64,000 bases of DNA from Octopus sinensis (Eukaryota): the NCBI RefSeq assembly GCF_006345805.1, contig NC_043001.1, positions 23,002,001 to 23,066,000 on the forward strand, given 5' to 3'. Positions 3,166 to 38,626 of this stretch are shown piece after piece; the stretch's first letter is position 1; each line of letters begins with the position of its first letter. Under the pieces are notes generated by a model, which made no database searches, had not been told where the DNA came from, and saw nothing but the letters and a program-made list of their open reading frames with translations. The position numbers were made by a program, and so were the translations under genes.

Positions 3166-6128
3166 TACTAAATGTCATACAAAATAGATTTTTAAGTGAA
3201 ATCATGTTCATATCGTGAAAAAAAATAAACAAACATTTGGCAGTTATTGCACCCGACTCCAAATAATAAGGTGAGATATTCTCAAGGCATCAGCAACCAA
3301 TCTTTGAATTAATATGTCATTAAGGGTAAAAACGATCTTTTGTTTTTGTATGAAAAGGCTAGTGCAGTGTTGTCCTACTTTGACTTCAGCTAGACATAGG
3401 ACTTAAGCATTGTGTGTGTGTATGGGGTACACCTACTTTGGAAATGTGGCGGACTATAGTTCAATGAGTACATAGTACGCGTCTTGGGTAGGGTGGAAAT
3501 ATTTACTAGTCAGTAAACGGCCATAAAGAGGCCATACAGATTCAGTGATGATGAACGGATTCACATAATCAGGGGCAAATAACTTCTTCAATGAGTACTG
3601 GGTATGCATACATATATGTTCAAGATGCACCCAATAACCTGGTGTAACCGCTGTTAATCTTTCCCCGTGGGGACTATGTCCGCAGCGGAAAGTTTTTGTC
3701 ACGTCTGAGTGCACTCAAACGAGTTGAATATGACATTACATAAATATATTTTATTCAACGCTGCTTCGTGCAACATTATTTCATTCTAACATGTCCAAAT
3801 TTAGTGCACATCAGCTAAAGTACCGCATACTGTTGTAGTAAGGATAATTATCTGGATGTGGACGATAGGTCTTTGTGTTCGTAGCTAACGAAGTGAAACG
3901 ACACAGAAACGCGCGCGTCTTACTATCCAATGACGTCATTCACAGCTTGTCGTGTGTTTTTACACATATCTAGGGGGATAATTCTATCCCGGGATTATCT
4001 CTGCAGAGGAAGGTCTTCTCGTCTCCGTGTGAACTCAAACCTGTTGAATATGTCTTTAAGCGAATGTATTATATTCAATGTTGTTAAGGAAAGTAAAATC
4101 TCTCCTTTTTGAGGGAAGATTTACTGAGTTAGCTTTTGGCACTCTTTCGATTAATTTCTCAACAGAAAAACATAAGTATGATCGATTTATTAATTATTGG
4201 ATGTAACTGGTGCATATCGATTCCGAAGCAAAGAGAGACAAATTCGTTTATTAATGTAATTTAAATTACCTCTATAAGACTTATATAATTAAGTCTTATT
4301 CCACAGTTAGACATTTTCACTGATTATATTTCAGAGTTGATCACAATTTAGGCGGCTCAGTGGGGTATTCTTAGGTTTAGCTCACTAAGCTACTATTATA
4401 CTGAAAGCATCTTTTATAAGGCGCCGAGAGTTCTGTTGCCAAACATTCCAACCAGCTTTCCGATCTGAGGCTAACTCTCTCCCTTTCACCACCTATATTG
4501 GAAGCCTTGAGAAAAGAAATAGGCTTCATCCCTTCTCATCTATGCCAGTAATAAATAAATAAATAAATAAAGACTAGTGATACACTTCATGTAATCATTC
4601 GATGCACGTAGCTAAGATTTTAAGCAAGTAAGATCTCGGTTACTAAAATGGGTCCTCCATTATCCGTCTAGTTTGTATGTTTATGTAAATGTATATTATA
4701 TATACATAGGTAGCCCGAACAGAAAGCGTTCGTCCGAAACCGTGGACCCTTCTCCACAAACCGCTGCCAGCGTGTATAAATAGCGACTGTGCGTATGTTG
4801 CGTATATTAGCCCCTAACATAGAAGGTATATTTCAATAAATGTCACTATAAATATTAGACATAAAGTGAATACATTCCAAAATGGCACCCCTTGTTTAAG
4901 TGGCTTTACTTCCTGAGGAAACAAGTCATTTATTAAGAAACAATTTTGTAACGTATGAATAGAATTACTATCTTTGACTATCCGTTTATTTTTATTTTTT
5001 ATTTCTCTTTAGTGAATCCCGAATTCCTATCAGTAATTGGCAATCTAAAGAGAAAATGTTGCTTTATTCACTCAGTGTGAAATATAGAAACTCTGCTGTA
5101 GGAATGAGTGCAGAAGGAGAATAGAAACCTTATCTCTTAATTTATAACTTACGTTTGGCAATATACCATAAGCTTAGCCTTTGATGTAACCATATCAGTA
5201 CAGCTATCAAAAATAGGTGCATGTTGTTGTTGTTTAGCCCCAGGTCAGCTCTGATCGAGCAGACCTATGTCAATGCCGTCTGCTTTTTATGCACAGTGCG
5301 TCTAGGAGTATATTATACAATACATCCTTCGTTTCTAAAACAGCTGGGTGTGATAAGAGGGATATTTGGGTTTATTTCTAGCAGTCTCAGTGGTTGCGTA
5401 GAGTTTTCTCTGTTGATTCGACAGGTGTTTTTTAAAAAATATATTTGAGATGTCAGGCAAGATTTATAATAAAATCCCTTCCTACTCCTCGCCATTCTTT
5501 GGTAGCGACGCACTCACGTATTCTAAGCCCCGTAATCCATTTCCCTTTCCTAGTATAAGAAATTATACTCATTTCAAGACGATTTTCGAAACGACTTTAA
5601 TATTTGGTAACCAAATGGCAAAGCATATCCTTAGCATAACTAAAGTCTGCATCCCAAAACTGGTACTTCTTCTTCAGGACCAAAAATATTTCAACTCATA
5701 ACAGCTGCCGACGTATTACAGGGTTCAATGGAGTGTGGATCTCACATCTAGGACGGTGCTGCTGTTACAAACACACAGACTTCCTGGATTGTAGCTAGAG
5801 ATAGGTCACTCGACTAATTGGTATTCAATCAGTATTGGATACGTCCCAACCTCTGGCCCACGAACATGCTGTCTCTTCTCCCTCCCTCTCTTTTCTCTTG
5901 TTACAATAATGGCCACTGTTTCTCGGGGATGGCTGCTCTCGTACCTCCACAACTCAAGCATCCTCGACCCATTCTTTTCTACCACTTCTTGTGACTCTAG
6001 GTGCATTCAAACCCCTTAGCTCTTCACTAACTACATACCAAGACCGTCTTGCTGAGAAAATAGGTCCTCTGGAATCTTTTCCTCAGAGCATGTCATTTCT
6101 GCAGATGTTCACATGCAACAGTTTAAAC

Positions 6129-15530: not shown

Positions 15531-16105
15531 GAGTGAGAGAGCAGTTCATGCCATCAAAGTGGCACTGGGGTAAAATATACGAAGCCCAATATACCCATCA
15601 TGACTACCCGTCTGATAAAGGTACACCAGGCACATGCATCACAACCATATGTGCGCGACATGGTGATCTCATATCAAGATAAACAGCACATGACCTTGCA
15701 GGTGGGGCCCAGTTAGAATTTTCTTCAGGTTGAGTAGCCCATCCTGCTCAAACGGTCCCTGAATAAGGGTGTTAGGATGTTGAACGAAACACCTATGTTT
15801 CCAGAGGTGAACCATTCAACTCTAAAGAATCCCTCTCAACACATGGCCATGATGCTCCCCCACTACTTCTGCTCGTGATCAGAGATGCAATATCGTCAGA
15901 TAAGGGACATGCTCAACTGGTTAGGTCAAACAATGACAAGCAAATCTGTGGTATTGAGCAGAATATTTGCTGTAGCCCATCTTTTATACCAAGACAAAAC
16001 AATGTACATGATACACTTCAATCAGTTAAGATCAGAAGCCATGAGAGCCACTGCCTGGTACTGCATCAGGGCATATAATAATAATAATTATTATTATTAT
16101 TATTA

Positions 16106-16149
<44 letters not shown>

Positions 16150-17380
16150 ATGAAAACTCACAGCTTATTTTGCTGGCTATGGTGGATAGTGTCAGCTGTC
16201 CATAGCCAGCAGACTAAGGTGACACTTCTTTACTGGTCATGCTTCAAGAACCCTGCGAAGAATTTTTGCAGTTCCAAGCAATGCTGATTTTTGTATGTGT
16301 TCTACCTTCAGACTCGCACCGATCTTTTTCAGCCATGTTGGTAGTTGAGTGCTGATACTTCCAAGTACACCAATTACTATTGGTATCACGTTTAGTCTCT
16401 TCATTGACCACAACTTTTATATTTCCCACTTTAAACCATCGTAGTTGTTTATTTATTCTTCTTCTTTCACATTGATCCTGTTGTTACCGGGTCATGCTAT
16501 GTCGATAATCATACACGTTTCTTTTTTATTCACCACAAGAATATCCGGTTTCCTATGTATGGTCAGGTGATCGCACAGGATCATTACGTCCCACAAGATT
16601 TTACATTTCTCATTTTCGGTGACTCCTTCTGGGGTTTGTTCATATCACGCCTTTGCTCTTTGTAGGCAGTGATTTCCACAGAGCTCCCAATGGATCATTC
16701 TTACCACATCGTCAAGGTGTCGTTTGCATTCGTGTTGTGCCAATTTTGGGCATTCGCTAACGATATGCCATACCGTTTTACCTCTCTCACCACACATTCT
16801 GCATTTGTCGCTATCGGTAGTGTTGTCAATTCTGCACTTCATATAATTGGTCCTTAACGCTTGTTCCTGAGCTGCGCATATGAGTGCTTCTGTCTCTATC
16901 TTCAGGTCGCTCCTCCTCATCTATAGCCATCGATCCTCTGTATCTCTCTTGGCATTCACATCTCTTTCAAACTGACCGTATATTTTTTCCCTTCCATGCT
17001 TTTTTTTTGTTCACTCTGTTTAAATTTTTCTATAGTTACACAAATTTCAGTTTTAATGATACTGGCCTTTTTCGGGTGTTTCAACAATGACTCCACGACA
17101 TTTTTATATACCACCCTAGGCTGTTTTCCTCTGCTTCGATACAGTCCCGGCAACTGATCAAACCTCTCCCACTCTTTTTTCTGGACAAGTACAGCATATC
17201 GGTGTCAGTCTTAGGGTAGAAGGCTCCGTGTACTGTCAACATTTTTCTGGTCTTGGTATCCATTTTCTTCATTTCTCTCTTTTGTCATTTTATAATTCCT
17301 ACTCCATCATCATGATCATCATGATCATCATGATCATCATGATCATCATCATCATCATCATGATCATCATCATCATCATC

Positions 17381-17425
<45 letters not shown>

Positions 17426-17442
17426 TTATTATTATTATTATT
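15531..17442. repeat. 1.9-kb tandem duplication, copy 1
   Basis: Nearly identical to 17443-19339 (period about 1912 bp); the ORF track shows identical peptides offset by about 1904 nt. Confidence 0.95.
16146..17290 (-). mobile_element. R4/Dong-type LINE, 5'-truncated and decayed (second copy at 18050-19196)
   Basis: LYLSRKKSGRGL; LKIETEALICAAQEQALRTNY; CRMCGERGKTVWHIVSECPKLAQ; RKPDILVV...IIDIA (PD..D RLE motif). Contains stops and frameshifts; the 3' end abuts (TAA)n. Confidence 0.9.
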
Positions 17443-18006
17443 GAGTGAGAGAGCAGTTCATGCCATCAAAGTGGCACTGGGGTAAAATATACGAAGCCCA
17501 ATATACCCATCATGACTACCCGTCTGATAAAGGTACACCAGGCACATGCATCACAACCATATGTGCGCGACATGGTGATCTCATATCAAGATAAACAGCA
17601 CATGACTTGCAGGTGGGGCCCAGTTAGAATTTTCTTCAGGTTGAGTAGCCCATCCTGCTCAAACGGTCCCTGAATAAGGGTTGCTTTAGGATGTTGAACG
17701 AAACACCTATGTTTCCAGAGGTGAACCATTCAAACTCTAAAGAATCCCTCTCAACACATGGCCATGATGCTCCCCCACTACTTCTGCTCGTGATCAGAGA
17801 TGCACATATCGTCAGCCACTAAGGGACATGCTCAACTGGTTAAGGTCAAACAATGACAAGCAAATCTGTGGTATTGAGCAGAATATTTGCTGTAGCCCAT
17901 CTTTTATACCAAGACAAAACAATGTACATGATACACTTCAATCAGTTAAGATCAGAAGCCATGAGAGCCACTGCCTGGTACTGCATCAGGGCATATAATA
18001 ATAATA

Positions 18007-18053
<47 letters not shown>

Positions 18054-19283
18054 ATGAAAACTCACAGCTTATTTTGCTGGCTATGGTGGATAGTGTCAGC
18101 TGTCCATAGCCAGCAGACTAAGGTGACACTTCTTTACTGGTCATGCTTCAAGAACCCTGCGAAGAATTTTTGCAGTTCCAAGCAATGCTGATTTTTGTAT
18201 GTGTTCTACCTTCAGACTCGCACCGATCTTTTTCAGCCATGTTGGTAGTTGAGTGCTGATACTTCCAAGTACACCAATTACTATTGGTATCACGTTTAGT
18301 CTCTTCATTGACCACAACTTTTATATTTCCCACTTTAAACCATCGTAGTTGTTTATTTATTCTTCTTCTTTCACATTGATCCTGTTGTTACCGGGTCATG
18401 CTATGTCGATAATCATACACGTTTCTTTTTTATTCACCACAAGAATATCCGGTTTCCTATGTATGGTCAGGTGATCGCACAGGATCATTACGTCCCACAA
18501 GATTTTACATTTCTCATTTTCGGTGACTCCTTCTGGGGTTTGTTCATATCACGCCTTTGCTCTTTGTAGGCAGTGATTTCCACAGAGCTCCCAATGGATC
18601 ATTCTTACCACATCGTCAAGGTGTCGTTTGCATTCGTGTTGTGCCAATTTTGGGCATTCGCTAACGATATGCCATACCGTTTTACCTCTCTCACCACACA
18701 TTCTGCATTTGTCGCTATCGGTAGTGTTGTCAATTCTGCACTTCATATAATTGGTCCTTAACGCTTGTTCCTGAGCTGCGCATATGAGTGCTTCTGTCTC
18801 TATCTTCAGGTCGCTCCTCCTCATCTATAGCCATCGATCCTCTGTATCTCTCTTGGCATTCACATCTCTTTCAAACTGACCGTATATTTTTTCCCTTCCA
18901 TGCTTTTTTTTTGTTCACTTCTTGTTTAAATTTTTCTATAGTTACACAAATTTCAGTTTTAATGATACTGGCCTTTTTCGGGTGTTTCAACAATGACTCC
19001 ACGACATTTTTATATACCACCCTAGGCTGTTTTCCTCTGCTTCGATACAGTCCCGGCAACTGATCAAACCTCTCCCACTCTTTTTTCTGGACAAGTACAG
19101 CATATCGGTGTCAGTCTTAGGGTAGAAGGCTCCGTGTACTGTCAACATTTTTCTGGTCTTGGTATCCATTTTCTTCATTTCTCTCTTTTGTCATTTTATA
19201 ATTCCTACTCCATCATCATGATCATCATGATCATCATCATCATCATCATCATCATCGTCATCATCATCATCATCATCATCATC

Positions 19284-19339: not shown

Positions 19340-20441
19340 TCCCCATGAATATAAGAAAGGTAGAAAGGAGTATGATAAATAAAGTAACACAAAAGATAAA
19401 TATTGTAATTCCATACATCCAGACGGAGGACATAACACAAACAAGGAATCTTCTCCGAACATTTGCTAGCACTACTTGCTGAGGAGAAATTACAACTTAA
19501 GAAAACAAAAAAATGGTGGAGCAAAAAGAACCATGGTGGAAACGACGCATTGAAAGGTACATAATGCGGACAAGGCAAGATCTAGGAAAAACTGAGCAAT
19601 GGTTAAGAGGAAATTGAAAAAATGGGGAAAAGACCGACCGAGAAAAATTAGAGAAGAAATATAAAATACGGAAGGACGGGTTTAATACTGTAATAGAGCA
19701 GTTAAAACAGAGGATCATGACAAAAAAAACAGAAGATCAGAAGATTTGTGAACAGAAATATGCAGTTCGAGAAGAGCAGATAGTTAAAAAATAACCCAAA
19801 GCAATTCTTCCGAACCTTAGAAGGAGACAATGGGGAAAATGTTGCTCCTGATGCAAATCAAGCCAAGGAGCTCTGGAGCGGATTATGAGGAAACAATGTG
19901 GTGCATAAAAGGGATGCAATGTGGATAGGAACTATCAAGACAGAATTACAAGGAGAAAAGAAACAGGAATATTGTCATAAGCAGAGATGTCGTGAAAGAA
20001 CAAGTTGGTAAAGTGCCTAACTGGAAAAAACCCCGGACCAGATGGAATTCATGGTTTTTGGCTGAAGAGACGCCACGCGGTGCATGAAAGACTAGCAGCC
20101 CAATTGAATGAGTGTGTCCAGAAAGGTACAGTCCCTGCATGGATGGTGACTGGGAGGACAACACTTATAATGAAAGATAGAAGAAAGGGGAATATTGTGG
20201 GAAACTACCGTCCCATAGCATGCCTAAACATAATCTGGAAGATACTCACTGGAATATGTGCGGCAAAGGCATATACTTTCCTCGCACAGGAAGAAATACT
20301 ACCAAGGGAACAAAAAGCAGCCCTATTGGGCACAGCGCGCATCTTAAGGAAAGTATTATCTGCCTGAGGAACTTGTGGTGACATGACAAACGACTACAGA
20401 CCCCGGTGCACTTTTACCTACACTGTGTTACGAAGGAAAAA
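19340..20441 (+). mobile_element. R4/Dong-type LINE with a large internal deletion
   Basis: EPWWKRRIE, PGPDGIHGFWLK and GNYRPIACLNIIWKILTG (RT N-terminal part) are joined in frame to the C-terminal AALLGTARILRKVL*; flanked by (AAT)n. Confidence 0.9.
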
Positions 20442-21244: not shown

Positions 21245-21312
<68 letters not shown>

Positions 21313-21389
21313 CTTCTTTTTTAAGAAAGCAACCAATAAATGTACTGTAATGTACTTACATTTTCCTTTTCCGTGTCATTTGTAGAAGA

Positions 21390-21456
21390 ATGGAATCTTT
21401 GATTGATAAAGTGGACGCAAGCAAGTGGGAGGAGATAGACGCCAGCAAAGTTGACG
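21390..21456 (+). CDS. Uncharacterised 96-aa protein, coding exon 1 (MESLIDKVDASKWEEIDASKVD-G)
   Basis: Polypyrimidine tract and TTTGTAG acceptor ending at 21385, ATG at 21390, phase-1 donor G|GTAATT at 21456/21457. Confidence 0.7.
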
Positions 21457-23459
21457 GTAATTCTTGTTATACTTGTTTTCAATATACAATTTAGGGTTAT
21501 GGAAGAATATAGGATTTTGATTGATAACTGATGCAACATTTTAGAGAAAAGTACCAACCAGTGATTAAGCATAGTTGTTTTTTATGAAAAAATTAACGTA
21601 TTTGATGGCATAAATGATGTATGGGCATATTAGACGCACTCCATTTTCAGCAGTGCATATTCAGGAAAAAAGTTTTTAGTGAATTAAAAGCATGCAAAAT
21701 ATTTAAAGCTATCAAGCAATACATCACAAAACATTACAAAAGTACTTTAACCATAACAGTATAAGAAGTGAGGCTAAGTGGAAGAAACTCTCTTAGATAG
21801 TATTAACCTGTAGTAGTGAACAACAGGGGTAAAATTAGCTTTTGAGAAGCACAATTTCGCATACAAGACTTGGGATGATTTTTTATAAGATACGCCTTAT
21901 ATGCCAGAAAATACGATAACTTTAATTGCGGTATGGTCAGTAGATATAGAGGTCGAAAAAACAGACAAATTTGATGTCAGGAGAGACAGAGTGTTTTCGG
22001 CGTTGACGCGTAAATAAGAGAGCCTGATTGCATCTTACTGGTGGCTATAAGAATCTAACCTCTCTACTTGTTTTAAGTTACAGTAAGTTAAGACTAGTTG
22101 TTTATTTTTTTCATCATCGTGAGCACGCTTGTACACCTGGAGTAGAACAACAATAACTGAGGCAAGAGTGCGTTGTTTTGTTATCTGCATGGTGAACCAG
22201 CAGCAATTTCTGCAAATAAAGGATGTAATATACCGAGGGAAGAATAGGATTTGAAGTGAAATGACATGGATGATTGAAAGAATTGAAATTATTACCAAAA
22301 CTACGTGGAGTGCGAGACGTTATAAATATTATACCAACGTATCCCGAGGTTGGTACGTTGACATTATATTTAGAAATGAGTGACGATGACCAGTTAGATA
22401 TAGGGAAAATAGAAACCAGACTAAAAGAAGCTTCACCACGTTAAGAAGGGTTAAGTGGATCGGGTACCGGGTACCGGGTAACTGCTGGGTGTGAAATGCT
22501 TATATGATAAGGTTGTTTGGTTTGAGAGGATTTACTTACGGAAGGTTGGATAGATTGGCTAATCTGAAATTCGTGATTAGCTTCCTTGATCAACTTCCCT
22601 GATATTGAAACCTGGGAGGTTTAGCAATCTCTTTGATTTGAAATCTACCTTTCAAATCTACAGCTTTGTGTAGCTGAGATGTCTGCTGACAATATTATAA
22701 AGATACGACGTTCTGTTACACTAAAATTCATTTTGACTGAACTCCATACCAAAGATCATTAATAGAGACCGTCTTCATGGCAATATGAAAGGAATGAACA
22801 TAATGAAAGGGACCACTAATTCCTACATATATAATATTTAGATGAAGGAAATAGTGGTGATAACGACAACTGCCAAAGGTCATCAGAAAAGTTTGGGGTT
22901 TGACTGCAAAACTATCGGAATCGATGGCAGGTGGAACAGTATTAGGCGATTTGGACGGGGACTGTGATTGAAGATATAACAATGCTGAATAACACATTTT
23001 TGGAAAGAAGCAGGTGGATGAGGTGCTATAGTACCGCATTTCGTTTAGAATCACTGAAAGAGAATCTAGAGAAGTAGAATATCAAATGCTTCTTTCGAGT
23101 TGCATACGAGTATGGCTTCATAGAGAGACGCTATCGCACAATGAAGTACACGGCAGAAAGGAACCATATCTCTCTGGTTGATGCAGTGTCTTAGTATAAC
23201 AAGTCACCAAGGTCAACGGAGGAGGAGCTTCAGAAAGCAATGTTCGTGTATGAATGGATACATCTGAGTGTAGAATTGATGTGGACTTAGAAAGACAAAG
23301 ATCCCGCATCTGTTTTGATTGGGGATAAGGTTTAGCAATAACTAAAATATTTACATCACTTTTTTTTCCCAACTTCAAACTTATGTAGTTACAAAAATAT
23401 TGTCATTGTTTACGGCTTCTGAATTCACTTTAATGTTATTTTGTTTTTATTCCTTGTAG

Positions 23460-23683
23460 GTTTGGTCGACTACCATATCATGCGAAATTTTAAAAACCTT
23501 GATGACCATACAATAGAATTCCTCATTCAAGCCAATGACGATTCAGATACAGTGAAGGCAACCTGCACACATCTTCTGAAGGGCAAAAACCCTATGCAGG
23601 GTATCGGTTCGTGCGAAATGAAAGTTGTTAATGATGCAATCCTCGCTATCAACCTTAACGGAGATTGTATTGTGCTAAAATAA
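23460..23683 (+). CDS. Uncharacterised 96-aa protein, terminal coding exon (GLVDYHIMRNFKNLDDHTIEFLIQANDDSDTVKATCTHLLKGKNPMQGIGSCEMKVVNDAILAINLNGDCIVLK*)
   Basis: Strong acceptor TTGTTTTTATTCCTTGTAG|G; phase 1 matches the upstream exon; non-repetitive protein-like composition; AATAAA at the stop codon. Confidence 0.72.
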
Positions 23684-26600
23684 TAAAATCACAATTCAGC
23701 TAACAACAACGCTATTCGCTGCTTTCGTAGAGGATGCATTATTTTCTACTTATTTATAATGCTATTTCTTCCATGTTCATTTTAAAACTTTTGAAATAAT
23801 CCATTATCCTTTAACTTCGACATTATTTTGAAATTAAACCAACTTTAAGAGAACAAAACCTGTTTTTGCTTCACTAACTACCACTAACAAGCAGGGTAAA
23901 CAACAATACTGTAACATGAAAAAGTCCACTAACATGAACTTTCAGATATTTTGGTTTATTGCACATTGTGACAATCAACTAAATTAATAAAACATTTTTT
24001 AAATGATACTAGTTGTTTAACTGATCTGTAATTTATTATTGGTGTATAAATAGAAAGGAACTGAAGCAGAAGTCGACTTGGTTTTTCCAACAGTACGTAT
24101 TTTGTACGTCATGCAGTCATCAACCACGCTATGATAGTGTTTGTGTTTTTTAAACAAGCTTTCATCGTGAGTTGAAGTATATATTCCCTTCAGCTTTATT
24201 TAAAGCTTTATAAACTTGAAAACATTTTAAGTAGTGAACGACAATGTTGGTTACAGATAAGAGTATAGCTTTCTGGTGGAAGCATAAAATATGTGTACAC
24301 TGCAACGTTTCGAAATTAAAACTGGTGATAATAATACATTAGGGTAGCTAATAAAGAAAATGACGATAGAAGGCTCAGCGAAGGAAATTTCTTCTAAAAG
24401 CACAAGAATCCAGTTTAGCTTTATCATGGATATTAAACAATTCAAGACAAGCAAAATAACGAGGAACGAAAATCCGAAACTAAGTATTTCAACCAGTAAT
24501 TTATATTAAAAAAATAAAAGGTAGTTCTAAACTAAATTAAGTCGAATTTAGATTGACTGAGAGAAACTGTACATAATATAGTGGTCATTTAAAAATATCT
24601 TACAATAAATACAACAAAAAGAACTTATTAGACGCTGATTTAAAAAGTGAGAAAAATATGTCCAGTGGGAAAAAATCGTGTACAAACTTTACCAAATGAA
24701 TAATGGTTTACACAAACAAAAAGTGATAACATCAAGTTTGGCGAAAAATACAAACATCCTTTCTCTCAACTAAAAATAGCAGCCAATAGATATCTGAACT
24801 CTAATTACAATGACAAGAGTATTAAAGTAAATGAATGACCAGCAAAAATATACTTACTAGAAACAAGAATCAATAACATTTATTTTTAGCTAAAATAAAG
24901 AAGATAACAATCTTTGAAAAATCACAGAAAAATCTCCTGCTAACCAACTCATAGCTTGTTTTCTTATTGTTAAAACGAACCTTTGGCCAAGTAATCTGCA
25001 GGTGAACTTCTTGTTTGGACATCAGTTACGAAAGAAAATTCTCAATAGATATATGAAGAAAGAATCGGTATTGCCATCTTTAAGAATTATAGTGTAATGT
25101 TTGTCGTTTTGTTTCTAAAGTGTGAGTTAGAAATTTTTACTTGAAACAACAACCCAAATTGTTCTGCCACTTATGAGAGAATTTAATGAATGCAAGGATT
25201 AAAGAAAACAAAGTAAGCTGAAGGAACATTTTTATAAGGATACACAGGTGATTGTTTGGTTAAGGAGGCTTTTCTTTCAGTGATCTCTAGGCTCTTTTGG
25301 TAGCGACATATATGACTGCGTTCGCGTCATGTTCACACATACCAGCTACTTGTCTATCGCTGTCTGCATCTCGACCACAAGCGATCTTTCGGAAGGGGAC
25401 TATTTTTATAGCCGATAGCAAGCTCAAACGAGAAAAAAAAATGTTTTGGTGGCAAAGAGAAAATTACTCATTTGGCTGCTTTTAGCTGACATCGTAACAA
25501 AACGTGGTGGTTCCTGTTATGATCATGTATGAAGAAATAATTATGACCCGCGGTTAGACTGGCCATGTGACACTGTAAAGTAGGGGGACCATTGTTTGAC
25601 TACAAACTTAAGAAATTATGGAACAGAATGCAAAACCCGATACAGAGGGACTTACACGTTACGATCTGGTAAAATGTTTTCGATTATTTTGAAGGTAAAT
25701 GACAAGACGTGTAGACGATGAGTATCTATAATATTTGTTTCTTTACGAACCACAAAAGATTAGTAACTAATAAATACCAAGCATTTGGCATCCGCCCGAT
25801 TATAATTTCACACTTCCAGGTACAATATTATTTGTATAATACAATTCCTGTCACATATGATACTTAATCCTACGTTTATGATTTAATGCAATTTAAAAAC
25901 GAAATAACAAATGTTCACTAAAACTAAGAATAAATATCCTACGAAAGTAATATCCTTATGGGTAGGCGCGTGACCTAGTGGTTGGGTTGTTACACATGTT
26001 ATCGTAAGATAGTGATTTCGATATCCGGGTCGAGCAGTGCGTTGTGCTCTGCTGGGAGGTTAAACTTGCAATAGACTAACGTCTAGTTCAGGAAGTGTTG
26101 TAATCTCAGCCACTTTGACATCATGGAAACCGGATTAAACTCCATTTTATGAGTCCTGGGGATCATGATAGACCTAAGTTTGAAGTAATATTCTTAACAA
26201 TTAGCAGAAATTGTTACACTCTAAACTGTTCGGTTCGCATGAATTAGAAGAACTTGTTAATTACTTCCATATTAAGATATCGTGTCATCATTTAATGACA
26301 CTTTTTTTTTTGCGATGCAGCAATTGTCAAATAATCATTGCACCATGGTTCACAGTAAAAATATCCAGTGGAGAGTGGGGGTAGGTGATAGAGACTGTAA
26401 CATTCTTTCTATTACCACAATTCGTTACATTAGAAATTAAACAAGATGTCCGTTTGTGTTTGTGCGATTTTGTGTATTTACAGCACACAGCATAAAGTTG
26501 GCATTCATATTCTCTTGATGTAGAAGAATCGACTAAATGAGGACCATCGTGTAGGGAACAAATACAATACCCCACAACAGTACAACAACATACTAAAATC

Positions 26601-27384
26601 GTTGTCTTTCTCACTCAACACTGAAATAAAAGTAACATCAATAGTCTCAGTAACCCTAAACACTGTGCGGGGATATACACCATCAAGTGTATAAGTGCAG
26701 AGAAACTATTATACATTGACCAAGTACATCACGACTACATCCATCGTGATCACCACCTGAACCTATGGTTGTACACCAATAGACTGGACAATAGCGAAAG
26801 TGTTACATGCCCAGGCTATCACATTTCTCTTCCATGTAATTCATCACAGCATGTTGGATTGTGCAATATGGTCCTCAGCTCGGCGGAGGCATGGTGTATA
26901 GTTGGGAAGAAGGATCTTTGGGTCGCGTCAGTTCGTTCGGATAACTACAGGCACATTATAGGACTGCGATATCAAGAATTGCATAACAGCAGCAGGTGTT
27001 GCAATCGTTAACAGTTTGTAATTCAGTTTCTACCGTGAATAGAAACAAATTCCAGCGTATTTCGAAACAGTTTTCCCCCTTTACCCAAAGGTTAATGTTT
27101 TCTTTTCTAGAATACTCTTTTCCTTTGAATCCAATTGACGATCAATTGCTGTCAGGTTTGTAAATTAATGAAGCCACTGTCAGTGAGCAAGAATTGGTAA
27201 ACGGAAACAGTGCAGAAAACCAGAACTTTTGGTGGCAGTGACGATGAAAAGTTACCTGTTTATAGTTTATTATTTTTCCATACACATTGCCTAAAGATAT
27301 ATATATATATATATATATATATATCTTTAGGCGATGTGTGTGGCAGAATATTAACAATATGCATATGTGTGTGTGTATGTGTGT

Positions 27385-36623: not shown

Positions 36624-38626
36624 TATGGAAATCAAAGACGTGACTTCTCGTCAAGTTGGTATACTGGTCAGCCATAGTTAGAGTATTCTCTTTCAAAGAA
36701 AGCCTTGTTTTGTTTTGCTTGTCAGCACTTTAATACTTTTGCTCAAGCTGATACTTTTTTTTATTTAAAAATCGATATTCTAATAGGCATTATGCAAAAG
36801 AAAACAAAACAAAGGTTTAAATAAGCACGCCAACTCTGCAATCCACCAACAGCGTTTATCTAATAACAACATCCGTATCTTCAATCTTGCAAAATGATCA
36901 GTTGAGCAAAAACCGTTATTATATCAGTTCCATTGTTGATATTGTTAATTTTCTTTGTGCAAACGAATTGCCTTTTCGAGGAAATGAAAATGAAGCTTTT
37001 TAGGATCTTTATTCAGAAAATGACACGCAGCCTTGTGGTCTTTTTATGAAATTATTCCAGAACACATCAGAGAAAGACTCAAAGCTAATGGCATGTTACA
37101 GCACGATTCCAAAAAATGCGACCTACACCTCAGCAGCAATGCAAAACGAAATCATGGAATTGTTGAGAAGACACACTGTCAGCCTCGTGGTCGATGAAAT
37201 AAAATGTTTCAATGTTCATTACTTTATCCTGAAATGTGACGGAACGCGTGATTTGAGTAATACTGAAAATCTTGCAATTGTTATTAGGTACTTGCAAAAC
37301 AGCAGGGTTCTGGAAAATTTAGTTGCGATGCCAACTACTCAACAATATGATACTGAAACATTGGCCGACTTGATAATTAAGGAATTAACCAACCTTTACA
37401 TTGATCCAAAGCGTATGTTGTCACAATGCTTTGATGATGCTTTTGTGATGCCTGGCAAAATAGGTGGCATTCAAAGAAAGATTCAGAATCGACTTGAGAA
37501 ACATATACCTTATGTTCATTGTCTTAATCACCAGTTGCATCTTGTCGTGGTTAACACAATAAAGCGGATTCCGGAGTTAGCTACGTTCTTTGACACCGTT
37601 AATATTCTTCATAATTTTATTAAACGGCCAAAGAGAGCTAGTCTCTGGAAAGGATTGAAGTTGCCACGTCTTATGGAGCATAGGTGGTCGGGTCATTTCA
37701 CTGCCATTGCTTCTGTAATAGAAAATCACTCCAAAATTGTTGGTTTGCTAACCGAATGCACAGATTCGTCAGATTCAAAAACGTGTATAGAGGCAACTGG
37801 AATTTTACATCAAGTTCGTTCCCCAAGGTTTGTTTTTCTAGCCTTTGTTCTTAGCAAATTTCTGCATATAAATGGACCAGTAGACAAACAGCTTCAGAGT
37901 CACAAATGTGATATATACCATGACCTTGGGCTTCTTAAGATTGCAAAGAGTAAAATAACCAAACTGAGAAACTCTTTAATATTTGATGAGATTCTGAAAC
38001 AAATGAGTCGATTTAATGTTATTGAGGAACGAATGTGTCGAAAAGCTTGCGGGTCCCGACGTTTTTCAGATTATGTTGTTGAATCCCTGGTACCATCACA
38101 AGATGACTGGATAACCTCTCATCGCAAAATTTATTTCGTGATCATCGATGAAAGCTTGGGAGTGCTAGATAATAGATTTTCTGAGCAAAACGATAGCATA
38201 TATTCTTCCTTGGCAAGTCCGAGACATTTTTGGATTTTGATGCTTTTAAAACCTTTGAGCAATTTAGTTAATTCTGATAAATCGGCCTTACTTTCTGAAT
38301 TTAGTGTGGCAAAAGCATACATTTCCAAACAAAATATGATGACACTGCTTGATATTTTTGGATCTTTACGTATTGTACAGGATGCCTTTCCAAATGTTTA
38401 TCCTTTGTATGGCGCAGCATTAACATTTGGATCTAGTACAGCTACATGTGAATCATCGTTTTCGACGCTAACTCGAATTATGACACCCTTTCGACGAAAT
38501 ATGAAACACCAGCGAAAACCAAACCTCGTGATACTTGCTTCTCTTAATAAATACAAATCAAGTATAGAGAAGGACGATATTCTTAAATCTTTTGCCTTGC
38601 GTTGCCGTAGATTGCAGTTGTATTAA
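36624..38626 (+). pseudogene. hAT transposase (ZMYM1/FAM200-like: TTF zinc finger, DUF4371 region, dimerisation domain); 526-aa ORF at 37046-38626 with a broken N-terminus
   Basis: YGNQRRDFSSSWYTGQP*LEYS...FCFAC (stop 36675-36677, out of frame with the main ORF); catalytic motifs CDGTRD, QCFDDA, HCLNHQLHL, HRWS, TCESSFS. Confidence 0.85.

What the first reader, a model, noticed from the sequence alone, without database searches (positions are those of the whole stretch)
21386..23690. Small two-exon gene encoding an unrecognised 96-aa protein, not recovered by the ORF track
Two exons 2 kb apart have strong canonical splice sites and matching phase 1. Joined, they give MESLIDKVDASKWEEIDASKVDGLVDYHIMRNFKNLDDHTIEFLIQANDDSDTVKATCTHLLKGKNPMQGIGSCEMKVVNDAILAINLNGDCIVLK. 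The protein has an internal VDASK/IDASK repeat, three cysteines, beta-strand-like alternation and no obvious signal peptide. The ATG lies 4 nt after an acceptor (tandem TAG/AAG), so an upstream exon must exist; it could be non-coding or add N-terminal residues. I cannot assign a family, so this may be a lineage-specific gene.
Basis: partly seen in the sequence, partly recalled or inferred. Interest (0 to 1): 0.7.

Follow-up and report, generated by a model that had tools for sequence, protein, structure and literature searches.

The report
Known small conserved mollusc gene, function unknown
The two exons are a real, expressed-type octopus gene already in RefSeq as an uncharacterised 96-residue protein; it is not octopus-specific but belongs to a small, unnamed protein family found throughout molluscs, whose only named member is a pearl-oyster "antimicrobial" protein and whose fold matches no solved structure.

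Summary
The ATG is at 21390 and exon 1 runs to 21456. A GT-AG intron spans 21457-23459, and exon 2 spans 23460-23683. Joined, they give exactly the 96 aa quoted.

It is a real gene but not an unrecognised one. The product is identical to RefSeq XP_036359113.1 (LOC118763595, Octopus sinensis).

Orthologues:
- Argonauta hians: same phase-1 intron, 77% identity, dN/dS 0.16.
- A second octopod: exon 2 only.
- Sepia pharaonis: 51% identity, seen as a spliced mRNA.

HMM searches reveal a family of 95-102 aa acidic proteins with no signal peptide. It occurs in bivalves, gastropods and cephalopods, plus an environmental clade of unknown origin. Nothing turned up in a one-motif scan of prokaryote genomes, in Pfam or in PDB sequences. 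The only named member is pearl-oyster 'AMP-1' (probably PmAMP-1).

AlphaFold2 with the family alignment gives a confident all-beta model (pLDDT 95). It has no significant Foldseek match, only weak resemblance to OB-like barrels.

So the gene is neither lineage-specific nor new. Its function is unproven, and the AMP label fits poorly with pI 4.7 and no leader. An upstream non-coding exon is supported but was not found in the window.

The parts
21360..21385 (+). 3' splice site (polypyrimidine tract + TAG) immediately upstream of the start codon. It implies at least one upstream 5' exon, which was not located in the window.
   Evidence: One search shows the sequence. It is conserved in Argonauta (TTTTTCAG|GAAAATG). 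A similar acceptor lies 10 nt 5' of the ATG in the unrelated member L003. The O. vulgaris model CAI9722824.1 departs from the genome exactly here.
21386..21456 (+). First coding exon: 4 nt of 5' UTR (AAGA), then CDS 21390-21456 (Met1 to the first base of the Gly23 codon). The donor is G|GTAATT.
   Evidence: The exon is 100% identical to residues 1-23 of XP_036359113.1.
21457..23459 (+). Phase-1 GT-AG intron, 2003 nt. It is not conserved with Argonauta, where the intron is about 3.0 kb.
   Evidence: The same intron position occurs in Argonauta and in loci L003-L005.
23460..23683 (+). Second and last coding exon: residues 23-96 plus the TAA stop (23681-23683).
   Evidence: Homology of the Sepia pharaonis mRNA to the window begins at 23461, one base from this exon's first base.
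23684..23800 (+). Proximal 3' UTR with blocks conserved in Argonauta and a second octopod. Candidate poly(A) signals are AATAAA at 23682 (overlapping the stop) and ATTAAA at 23833.

Best explanation
Window 21386-23683 (+) holds the two coding exons of Octopus sinensis LOC118763595. This is a genuine gene under purifying selection, with at least one non-coding 5' exon further upstream.

It encodes a complete 96-aa protein. The protein is acidic (pI 4.7, net charge -7), has no signal peptide and forms a single domain. The predicted domain is compact: a short N-terminal helix followed by seven beta-strands.

It is the octopus orthologue of a family of about 97-aa proteins with no Pfam entry. The family is present across Mollusca, and its only named member is 'AMP-1' of the pearl oyster.

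Shown here: gene structure, completeness of the ORF, selective constraint, family membership, taxonomic spread, and the confident model with no solved structural relative.

Inferred: it has no leader, no conserved disulphide array, no catalytic-looking invariant residues and a weakly OB-like small beta-barrel. From this it most likely acts inside the cell as a non-enzymatic binding module for a protein, nucleic acid or small ligand. I put that at about 55%. The alternative is a classical secreted antimicrobial peptide. If the antibacterial activity reported for the oyster homologue is real, it would come from protein released by lysed or degranulating cells.
For: - Exact identity to XP_036359113.1.
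- Argonauta orthologue: 77% identical, with the same exon-intron structure and splice sites. dN/dS is 0.16 with dS 0.90.
- Sepia pharaonis orthologue: 51% identical. It is present as an uninterrupted ORF on 14 short Logan contigs that read as spliced mRNAs. One of these comes from run SRR3011300, which is whole-animal RNA-seq according to PMC5541922.
- In-frame stops lie upstream of the conserved Met in transcripts of relatives.
- An exhaustive HMM search found 30 cluster representatives at E<=1e-3, nearly all 92-112 aa and aligned end to end.
- Every named member is a mollusc: Haliotis x4, Mya x3, Crassostrea, Mercenaria, Dreissena, Solemya, Littorina, Babylonia, Elysia and Pinctada.
- Pairwise comparison with Pinctada AMP-1 gives E=3e-13 over the full length.
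- All members examined are acidic, pI 4.5-5.8.
- AF2 with 58 sequences gives pLDDT 95.2 and pTM 0.85.
- The best Foldseek hits are OB-type barrels. None is significant.
Against: - No RNA-seq from O. sinensis itself was available, so the junction and the 5' exon are supported only by the RefSeq model, conservation and transcripts of relatives.
- The intracellular binding-module mechanism is inference from missing features. No partner, ligand or expression pattern is known.
- The Foldseek resemblance to OB folds is weak: best TM 0.47, E 0.2-0.3.
- The oyster homologue was named an antimicrobial peptide, which points to a different role. I could not read that paper.
- Proteins without a leader can still be exported.
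Confidence: 0.75

Rival explanations
1. It is a bona fide humoral immune effector. On this view it is the octopus orthologue of PmAMP-1, an anionic antimicrobial protein with no leader, released from haemocytes or epithelia and acting directly on bacteria.
For: - Family member QDK55492.1 is named AMP-1 [Pinctada imbricata] and is homologous over its full length.
- PmAMP-1 is cited as an AMP identified after bacterial challenge (PMC7551771).
- Mya has three copies on one contig, and Haliotis has alternative second exons. Diversification of this kind is common in immune genes.
Against: - Net charge is -7 and pI 4.7.
- There is no signal peptide or propeptide.
- The predicted fold is globular and beta-rich, not an amphipathic or Cys-stabilised peptide.
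- Strong purifying selection (dN/dS 0.16) is unlike the diversifying selection typical of AMPs.
- The primary paper could not be read. That the GenBank entry is the protein of that paper is my inference.
Confidence: 0.2
2. The two exons are part of a larger gene, as in the 206-aa O. vulgaris model CAI9722824.1 ('Alanine--tRNA ligase'). That model adds 16 N-terminal residues. It also splices from a donor inside exon 2 to a sequence about 14.6 kb downstream.
For: The O. vulgaris model exists and clusters with the 96-aa protein. Its C-terminal 124 residues map to window 38252-38623 on the same strand at 87% identity.
Against: - The downstream part is the C-terminus of a hAT transposase ORF at 37046-38626, with Pfam Dimer_Tnp_hAT.
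- The model contains no tRNA-ligase domain.
- The chimera removes the last three predicted strands of the domain.
- More than 50 family members end at the same …GDCVVxK terminus.
- The N-terminal extension has no counterpart in any relative. Transcripts of relatives carry upstream in-frame stops.
Confidence: 0.04
3. It is a cephalopod-specific orphan gene.
For: No Pfam, NCBIfam or PDB sequence match.
Against: Full-length homologues occur in bivalves and gastropods at HMM E-values down to 1e-32. Genomic loci of unknown organism (L003-L005), whose closest relatives in the searches are mollusc members, share the intron position.
Confidence: 0.01
4. It is not a gene but a chance ORF pair or a fragment of a transposable element.
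For: The surrounding window is rich in LINE and hAT debris and microsatellites.
Against: - It is single-copy in the window.
- It has no TE domain.
- It is conserved in position with the same intron in Argonauta.
- dN/dS is 0.16.
- The AF2 model is confident.
Confidence: 0.005

Closest known systems
RefSeq XP_036359113.1, uncharacterized protein LOC118763595 [Octopus sinensis]
   Same: Identical 96-aa sequence. The window is therefore from the O. sinensis assembly (contig 135.9 Mb).
   Different: Nothing differs at the protein level. The public record carries no family, fold or function.
AMP-1 [Pinctada imbricata] QDK55492.1. Probably the PmAMP-1 of He et al. 2019, Fish Shellfish Immunol 92:728, PMID 31279079.
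   Same: Full-length homology: 30% identity, E=3e-13. Same length (97 aa), same acidic charge (-7) and no leader.
   Different: Antibacterial activity has been claimed only for the oyster protein and is untested for the octopus one. The equation of the GenBank entry with the published PmAMP-1 is my inference from name, species and date. The paper is not held.
Classical molluscan antimicrobial peptides (defensins, big defensins, mytilins, myticins)
   Same: Small size, and a mollusc homologue with an immune-related name.
   Different: Those are secreted with a signal peptide, are cationic and are stabilised by conserved disulphide arrays (established knowledge). This protein is anionic, has no leader and has no conserved Cys array.
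OB-fold and other small beta-barrels (e.g. RecO N-terminal domain 3q8d, Teb1 OB-B 3u4z, SSB/Rim1)
   Same: All-beta protein of about 90-100 residues with one long bent strand. These are the top Foldseek hits.
   Different: The hits are not significant: E 0.2-0.5, TM 0.3-0.47. No helix is predicted between strands 3 and 4. There is no sequence-profile similarity.

Membership tests
Molluscan ~97-aa acidic beta-protein family (PmAMP-1-like; no Pfam entry) | End-to-end sequence homology to other members | tested here: met
   hmmsearch found 30 representatives at E<=1e-3, most aligned over positions 1-96. Profile searches gave E down to 1e-32. Pairwise comparison with Pinctada AMP-1 gives E=3e-13.
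Molluscan ~97-aa acidic beta-protein family (PmAMP-1-like; no Pfam entry) | Length 95-102 aa with conserved landmarks: W13, G23, Y27, the (K/N)(D/N)P(L/M) loop, and the C-terminal (I/L)(D/N)L(D/N)GD(C/I/V)VVxK | tested here: met
   Alignments A4 and A5. The octopus sequence has W13, G23, Y27, KNPM and INLNGDCIVLK.
Molluscan ~97-aa acidic beta-protein family (PmAMP-1-like; no Pfam entry) | Two coding exons split by a phase-1 intron in the Gly23 codon, with a further acceptor just 5' of the ATG | tested here: met
   Octopus, Argonauta, and loci L003-L005 of unknown organism.
Molluscan ~97-aa acidic beta-protein family (PmAMP-1-like; no Pfam entry) | Acidic protein with no N-terminal signal peptide | tested here: met
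   pI 4.5-5.8 for 14 members. The N-terminus MESLIDKVDASKWEEIDASK has 9 charged residues in 20 and no hydrophobic core (read directly). No dedicated signal-peptide predictor was available.
Molluscan ~97-aa acidic beta-protein family (PmAMP-1-like; no Pfam entry) | Antibacterial activity, as implied by the name AMP-1 | not testable with these tools
   Needs purified protein. The primary paper is not held.
Classical secreted cationic antimicrobial peptides | Signal peptide, net positive charge and a conserved disulphide array or amphipathic helix | tested here: not met
   Net charge is -7. There is no leader. Only one of the three Cys positions is widely shared. The model is a globular beta-domain.
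OB-fold | Significant structural superposition on a five-stranded OB barrel | tested here: inconclusive
   The best Foldseek hits are OB domains, but with E 0.2-0.5 and TM <=0.47. The profile search against PDB sequences shows nothing below E 0.3. Model coordinates could not be inspected.
Transposable-element protein (hAT / LINE) | TE Pfam domain, multiple copies | tested here: not met
   No Pfam hit for the 96-aa protein. It is single-copy in the window. The hAT domain lies in a separate ORF at 37046-38626.
Alanine--tRNA ligase (name attached to the O. vulgaris model CAI9722824.1) | tRNA-synthetase class II(c) or tRNA_SAD domains | tested here: not met
   Pfam on the 206-aa model finds only Dimer_Tnp_hAT.
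Cu/Zn superoxide dismutase (weak PDB sequence hit) | Significant sequence match | tested here: not met
   E=0.35 over 30 residues. The hit is absent from the family-profile search and from the listed top 50 Foldseek hits.

The most novel reading that the evidence does not exclude
The family is a previously undescribed protein fold. Within the mollusc lineage it would define a new class of anionic host-defence or stress proteins with no leader. Relatives of unknown organismal origin appear on short environmental contigs. The octopus gene would then be an entry point to a conserved, structurally novel module that no database has named.
Probability: 0.12. Interest if true: 0.55.

Novelty: already known. 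Interest (0 to 1): 0.22.

Why it matters
For the genome scan, this finding should be closed as a correctly spotted gene that is already annotated.

The value added here is modest:
- It links an 'uncharacterized' RefSeq entry to a coherent family that runs through bivalves, gastropods and cephalopods and has a conserved intron.
- It shows that the only functional label in that family (AMP-1) sits uneasily with the protein's chemistry.
- It flags three misleading public annotations.
- It provides a confident structural model that has no solved relative.

If the fold proved truly new, or the antibacterial claim held up, the family would deserve a Pfam entry and a structure.

Tried and rejected
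- AF2 with only three octopod sequences gave pLDDT 42 and was discarded.
- PDB sequence searches gave only chance-level hits, with the single protein (Cu/Zn SOD E 0.35, FBP32 E 1.6) and with the family profile (HRD1 and others, E>0.3).
- Foldseek against viral BFVD found nothing below E 0.29.
- I looked for the 16-residue N-terminal extension of the O. vulgaris model in the window by tblastn, and it is not present. If that exon is real and collinear, it lies more than 21 kb upstream, outside the window.
- A block at 4826-4922 is collinear with one 5.4 kb upstream of the Argonauta gene, so I considered it as the missing 5' exon. Its only GT (TTTAA|GTGG) would not leave the AG or CG needed to complete the Arg codon of the O. 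vulgaris model. This is left unresolved.
- A weak tblastn hit at 26748-26870 was considered as a decayed second copy of exon 2. At 29% over 41 aa and E 0.6, I rejected it as chance.
- The Rfam gathering scan of the whole window gave 0 hits.
- A prokaryote genome scan for the environmental 95-aa clade found no relative. The scan used a single conserved-motif pattern. NCBIfam gave nothing.
- Literature searches for LOC and XP identifiers and GenBank accessions gave 0 papers.
- The Pinctada PFAP-1 paper describes an unrelated 83-aa cationic helical protein.
Full report
**1. What is in the sequence.**
- A polypyrimidine tract ends in TAG at 21383-21385.
- Four bases (AAGA) follow, then ATG at 21390, with A at -3 and G at +4.
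- The frame stays open to 21456, where G|GTAATT is a donor that leaves one base of a Gly codon (phase 1).
- The next in-frame stop, if the intron is read through, comes after 12 codons.
- At 23459 a long pyrimidine tract ends in AG.
- Exon 2 (23460-23683) completes the Gly codon and runs to TAA.

The joined 291 nt translate to the 96 aa quoted. Exon 2 does show up as an 80-aa TTG ORF at 23441-23683 in a plain ORF list. So 'not recovered by the ORF track' is true only of exon 1 and of the join.

**2. It is a real gene, and an annotated one.**
A search of 5.8 billion proteins returned the identical 96-aa sequence as 'uncharacterized protein LOC118763595 [Octopus sinensis]', XP_036359113.1, on a 135.9-Mb contig. 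It also returned two relatives:
- A 97-aa Argonauta hians protein at 77% identity.
- An ORF call covering exon 2 of another octopod, at 88% identity.

The Argonauta locus (L001) has the same architecture: exon 1, a 3.0-kb intron and exon 2. The donor, both acceptors and the AG just upstream of the ATG are all conserved.

In a sensitive blastn of the two loci, only two matches in the gene region are unique and collinear. These are exon 1 (21360-21461) and exon 2 plus about 120 nt of 3' UTR (23433-23800). The intron does not align.

Nei-Gojobori dN/dS between Octopus and Argonauta is 0.16 (dN 0.149, dS 0.90). The protein, not merely the DNA, is therefore under constraint.

**3. The gene is cephalopod-wide and transcribed in a relative.**
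The closest non-octopod relative is P0075 (99 aa, 51% identity, E 6e-35). It sits as an uninterrupted ORF on 14 short contigs of 0.9-1.3 kb assembled from sequencing runs. One run, SRR3011300, is listed as Sepia pharaonis whole-animal RNA-seq in Table 1 of PMC5541922. These contigs are therefore spliced mRNAs.

Their DNA similarity to the window begins at 23461, one base from the start of exon 2. In these transcripts and in those of other members, in-frame stop codons precede the homologous Met with no intervening ATG.

This makes the 96-aa ORF complete. It also makes the exon implied by the acceptor at 21383-21385 a non-coding 5' exon.

**4. The upstream exon.**
- The acceptor is conserved in Argonauta.
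- A similar acceptor lies 10 nt upstream of the ATG in an unrelated member (L003).
- An O. vulgaris model (CAI9722824.1, 206 aa) carries 16 extra N-terminal residues. It diverges from the genomic reading exactly at this acceptor.

I could not find that exon in the 21.4 kb of window upstream. A conserved block at 4826-4922 is a candidate regulatory element or exon, but it does not fit the O. vulgaris junction.

**5. The O. vulgaris model is a chimera.**
After residue 71 of our protein, the model leaves exon 2 at an internal G|GTTCG (23606|23607). It continues with 124 residues that map at 87% identity to window 38252-38623 (+). That region is the C-terminus of a 526-aa hAT-transposase ORF at 37046-38626, with Pfam Dimer_Tnp_hAT and DUF4371.

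Pfam finds only the hAT dimerisation domain in the 206-aa model, and no tRNA-ligase domain. So the name 'Alanine--tRNA ligase' is unfounded. The fusion would delete the last three predicted strands of the domain. It is either a prediction artefact or a minor TE-exonised isoform.

**6. The family.**
An exhaustive hmmsearch of 1.84 billion cluster representatives used the three octopod sequences. It found 30 proteins at E<=1e-3, almost all 92-112 aa and aligned end to end. One was a repetitive 1002-aa false positive, which I excluded. Two further profile searches added more members.

Every member that carries a name is a mollusc:
- Haliotis rubra, H. rufescens, H. asinina and H. cracherodii
- Littorina saxatilis
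- Babylonia areolata
- Elysia marginata
- Mya arenaria (three genes on one contig)
- Mercenaria mercenaria
- Dreissena polymorpha
- Crassostrea virginica
- Solemya velum
- Pinctada imbricata

A distinct clade of about 25 clusters of 95-aa proteins (consensus MDLLSNLN…AINLDGDCVVRK) comes only from short JGI and Logan environmental contigs of unknown organism. It has no counterpart in 185,579 prokaryote species genomes, in a scan that used a single conserved-motif pattern.

None of 27 members hits any Pfam model credibly, nor NCBIfam. Genomic loci of three unnamed members (L003-L005) have exon 1 lying 1.8-2.6 kb upstream of exon 2, with the intron in the same Gly codon and phase.

The gene is therefore old, at least as old as the split between bivalves, gastropods and cephalopods. 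It is not lineage-specific.

**7. The one named member.**
P0018 is GenBank QDK55492.1, 'AMP-1 [Pinctada imbricata]'. It is 30% identical to the octopus protein over the full length (E 3e-13).

[quoted passage not shown] 2019, PMID 31279079) is cited in PMC7551771 among AMPs 'identified following bacterial challenge'. The paper itself is not held. That the GenBank entry is this PmAMP-1 is my inference from name, species complex and date.

**8. What the protein looks like.**
All 14 members examined are acidic: pI 4.5-5.8, and the octopus protein has net charge -7. The N-terminus is highly charged and cannot be a signal peptide.

The three cysteines are conserved in Octopus, Argonauta and Sepia. 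They are not conserved across the family, where only the last position is frequently Cys. The VDASK/IDASK repeat is peculiar to O. sinensis.

AF2 with three sequences failed (pLDDT 42). With the 58-sequence family alignment it gave pLDDT 95.2 and pTM 0.85, and all five models scored >=93.9. The elements are:
- a short helix (residues 4-7)
- strands at 13-15, 25-37, 40-46, 54-59, 73-79, 82-88 and 91-95
- the conserved KDPL motif, in the long 60-72 loop
- the conserved (D/N)G, at the last hairpin turn

Foldseek found no match with E<0.2 in PDB or BFVD. The best hits are OB-type barrels (RecO N-domain TM 0.47, Teb1, SSB/Rim1, the LysRS anticodon-binding domain) and a designed small barrel. AFDB was not available and I could not inspect coordinates. 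So 'new fold' is not established, only 'no solved relative detectable'.

**9. How it most likely works.**
Shown: a complete, constrained, single-domain, acidic beta-protein with no leader.

Inferred: it has no leader, no conserved disulphides, no invariant polar cluster suggestive of catalysis and a barrel-like all-beta model. From this I favour an intracellular, non-enzymatic binding module, at about 55%.

The alternative is that it is a genuine anionic antimicrobial effector as the oyster name implies, at about 20%.
- For: that name, the tandem triplication in Mya, and the two Haliotis isoforms. Those isoforms share exon 1 and use different second exons (73% identical overall).
- Against: the charge, the lack of a secretion signal and the low dN/dS.

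The remainder of the probability is 'some other role'.

**10. Verdict.**
The item is already in public annotation. Residual interest lies in an unnamed, structurally unplaced molluscan family.

Noticed in passing
window 37046-38626 (+): An intact 526-aa ORF of a hAT-family transposase (Pfam Dimer_Tnp_hAT, weak DUF4371). Its last 124 residues are the C-terminal half of the O. vulgaris protein model CAI9722824.1, which is mislabelled 'Alanine--tRNA ligase'.
   Followed up: yes
window 16092-19205: A tandem duplication with a period of about 1.9 kb and 97% identity. It carries LINE-type debris, including two identical 91-aa ORFs (16645-16920 and 18549-18824, minus strand) with a weak zf-RVT match, plus flanking microsatellites.
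   Followed up: partly
window 21246-21312: A perfect (TTA)22 microsatellite lies 75 nt upstream of the start codon, inside the presumed last 5' intron. It is absent at the homologous place in Argonauta.
   Followed up: partly
window 4826-4922: A block of about 100 nt, 76% identical and collinear with a block 5.4 kb upstream of the Argonauta orthologue. It is single-copy in both stretches. It could be a regulatory element or the missing 5' exon, but this is unresolved.
   Followed up: partly
window 20005-20367 (+): A 120-aa ORF that looks by eye like a fragment of a LINE reverse transcriptase (…NYRPIACLNIIWKILTGI…). It has no Pfam hit at E<=0.01.
   Followed up: partly
relatives: Haliotis rubra LOC124264254 (P0033, P0037): Isoforms X1 and X2 share an identical exon-1 peptide (24 aa) but differ throughout the exon-2 part (73% identity overall). 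This suggests tandemly duplicated, mutually exclusive second exons.
   Followed up: partly
relatives: Mya arenaria (P0034, P0036, P0040): Three paralogues lie on the same 58-Mb contig, which suggests a local tandem expansion of the family in this clam.
   Followed up: no
relatives: Elysia marginata GFR96948.1 (P0005), Solemya velum ScPMuIL_017946 (P0084): These look like further annotation errors. The 101-aa Elysia member is named 'monocarboxylate transporter 12'. The Solemya model carries a 92-residue N-terminal extension with no Pfam hit and no counterpart in the family.
   Followed up: partly
loci L006-L010 and proteins P0013, P0017, P0026-28, P0038, P0041-54: A coherent clade of 95-aa family members is known only from short environmental or SRA contigs. 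They are intronless ORFs near the 5' end of contigs of 1-1.9 kb. The organism is unknown, and a single-motif scan found nothing in prokaryote reference genomes.
   Followed up: partly
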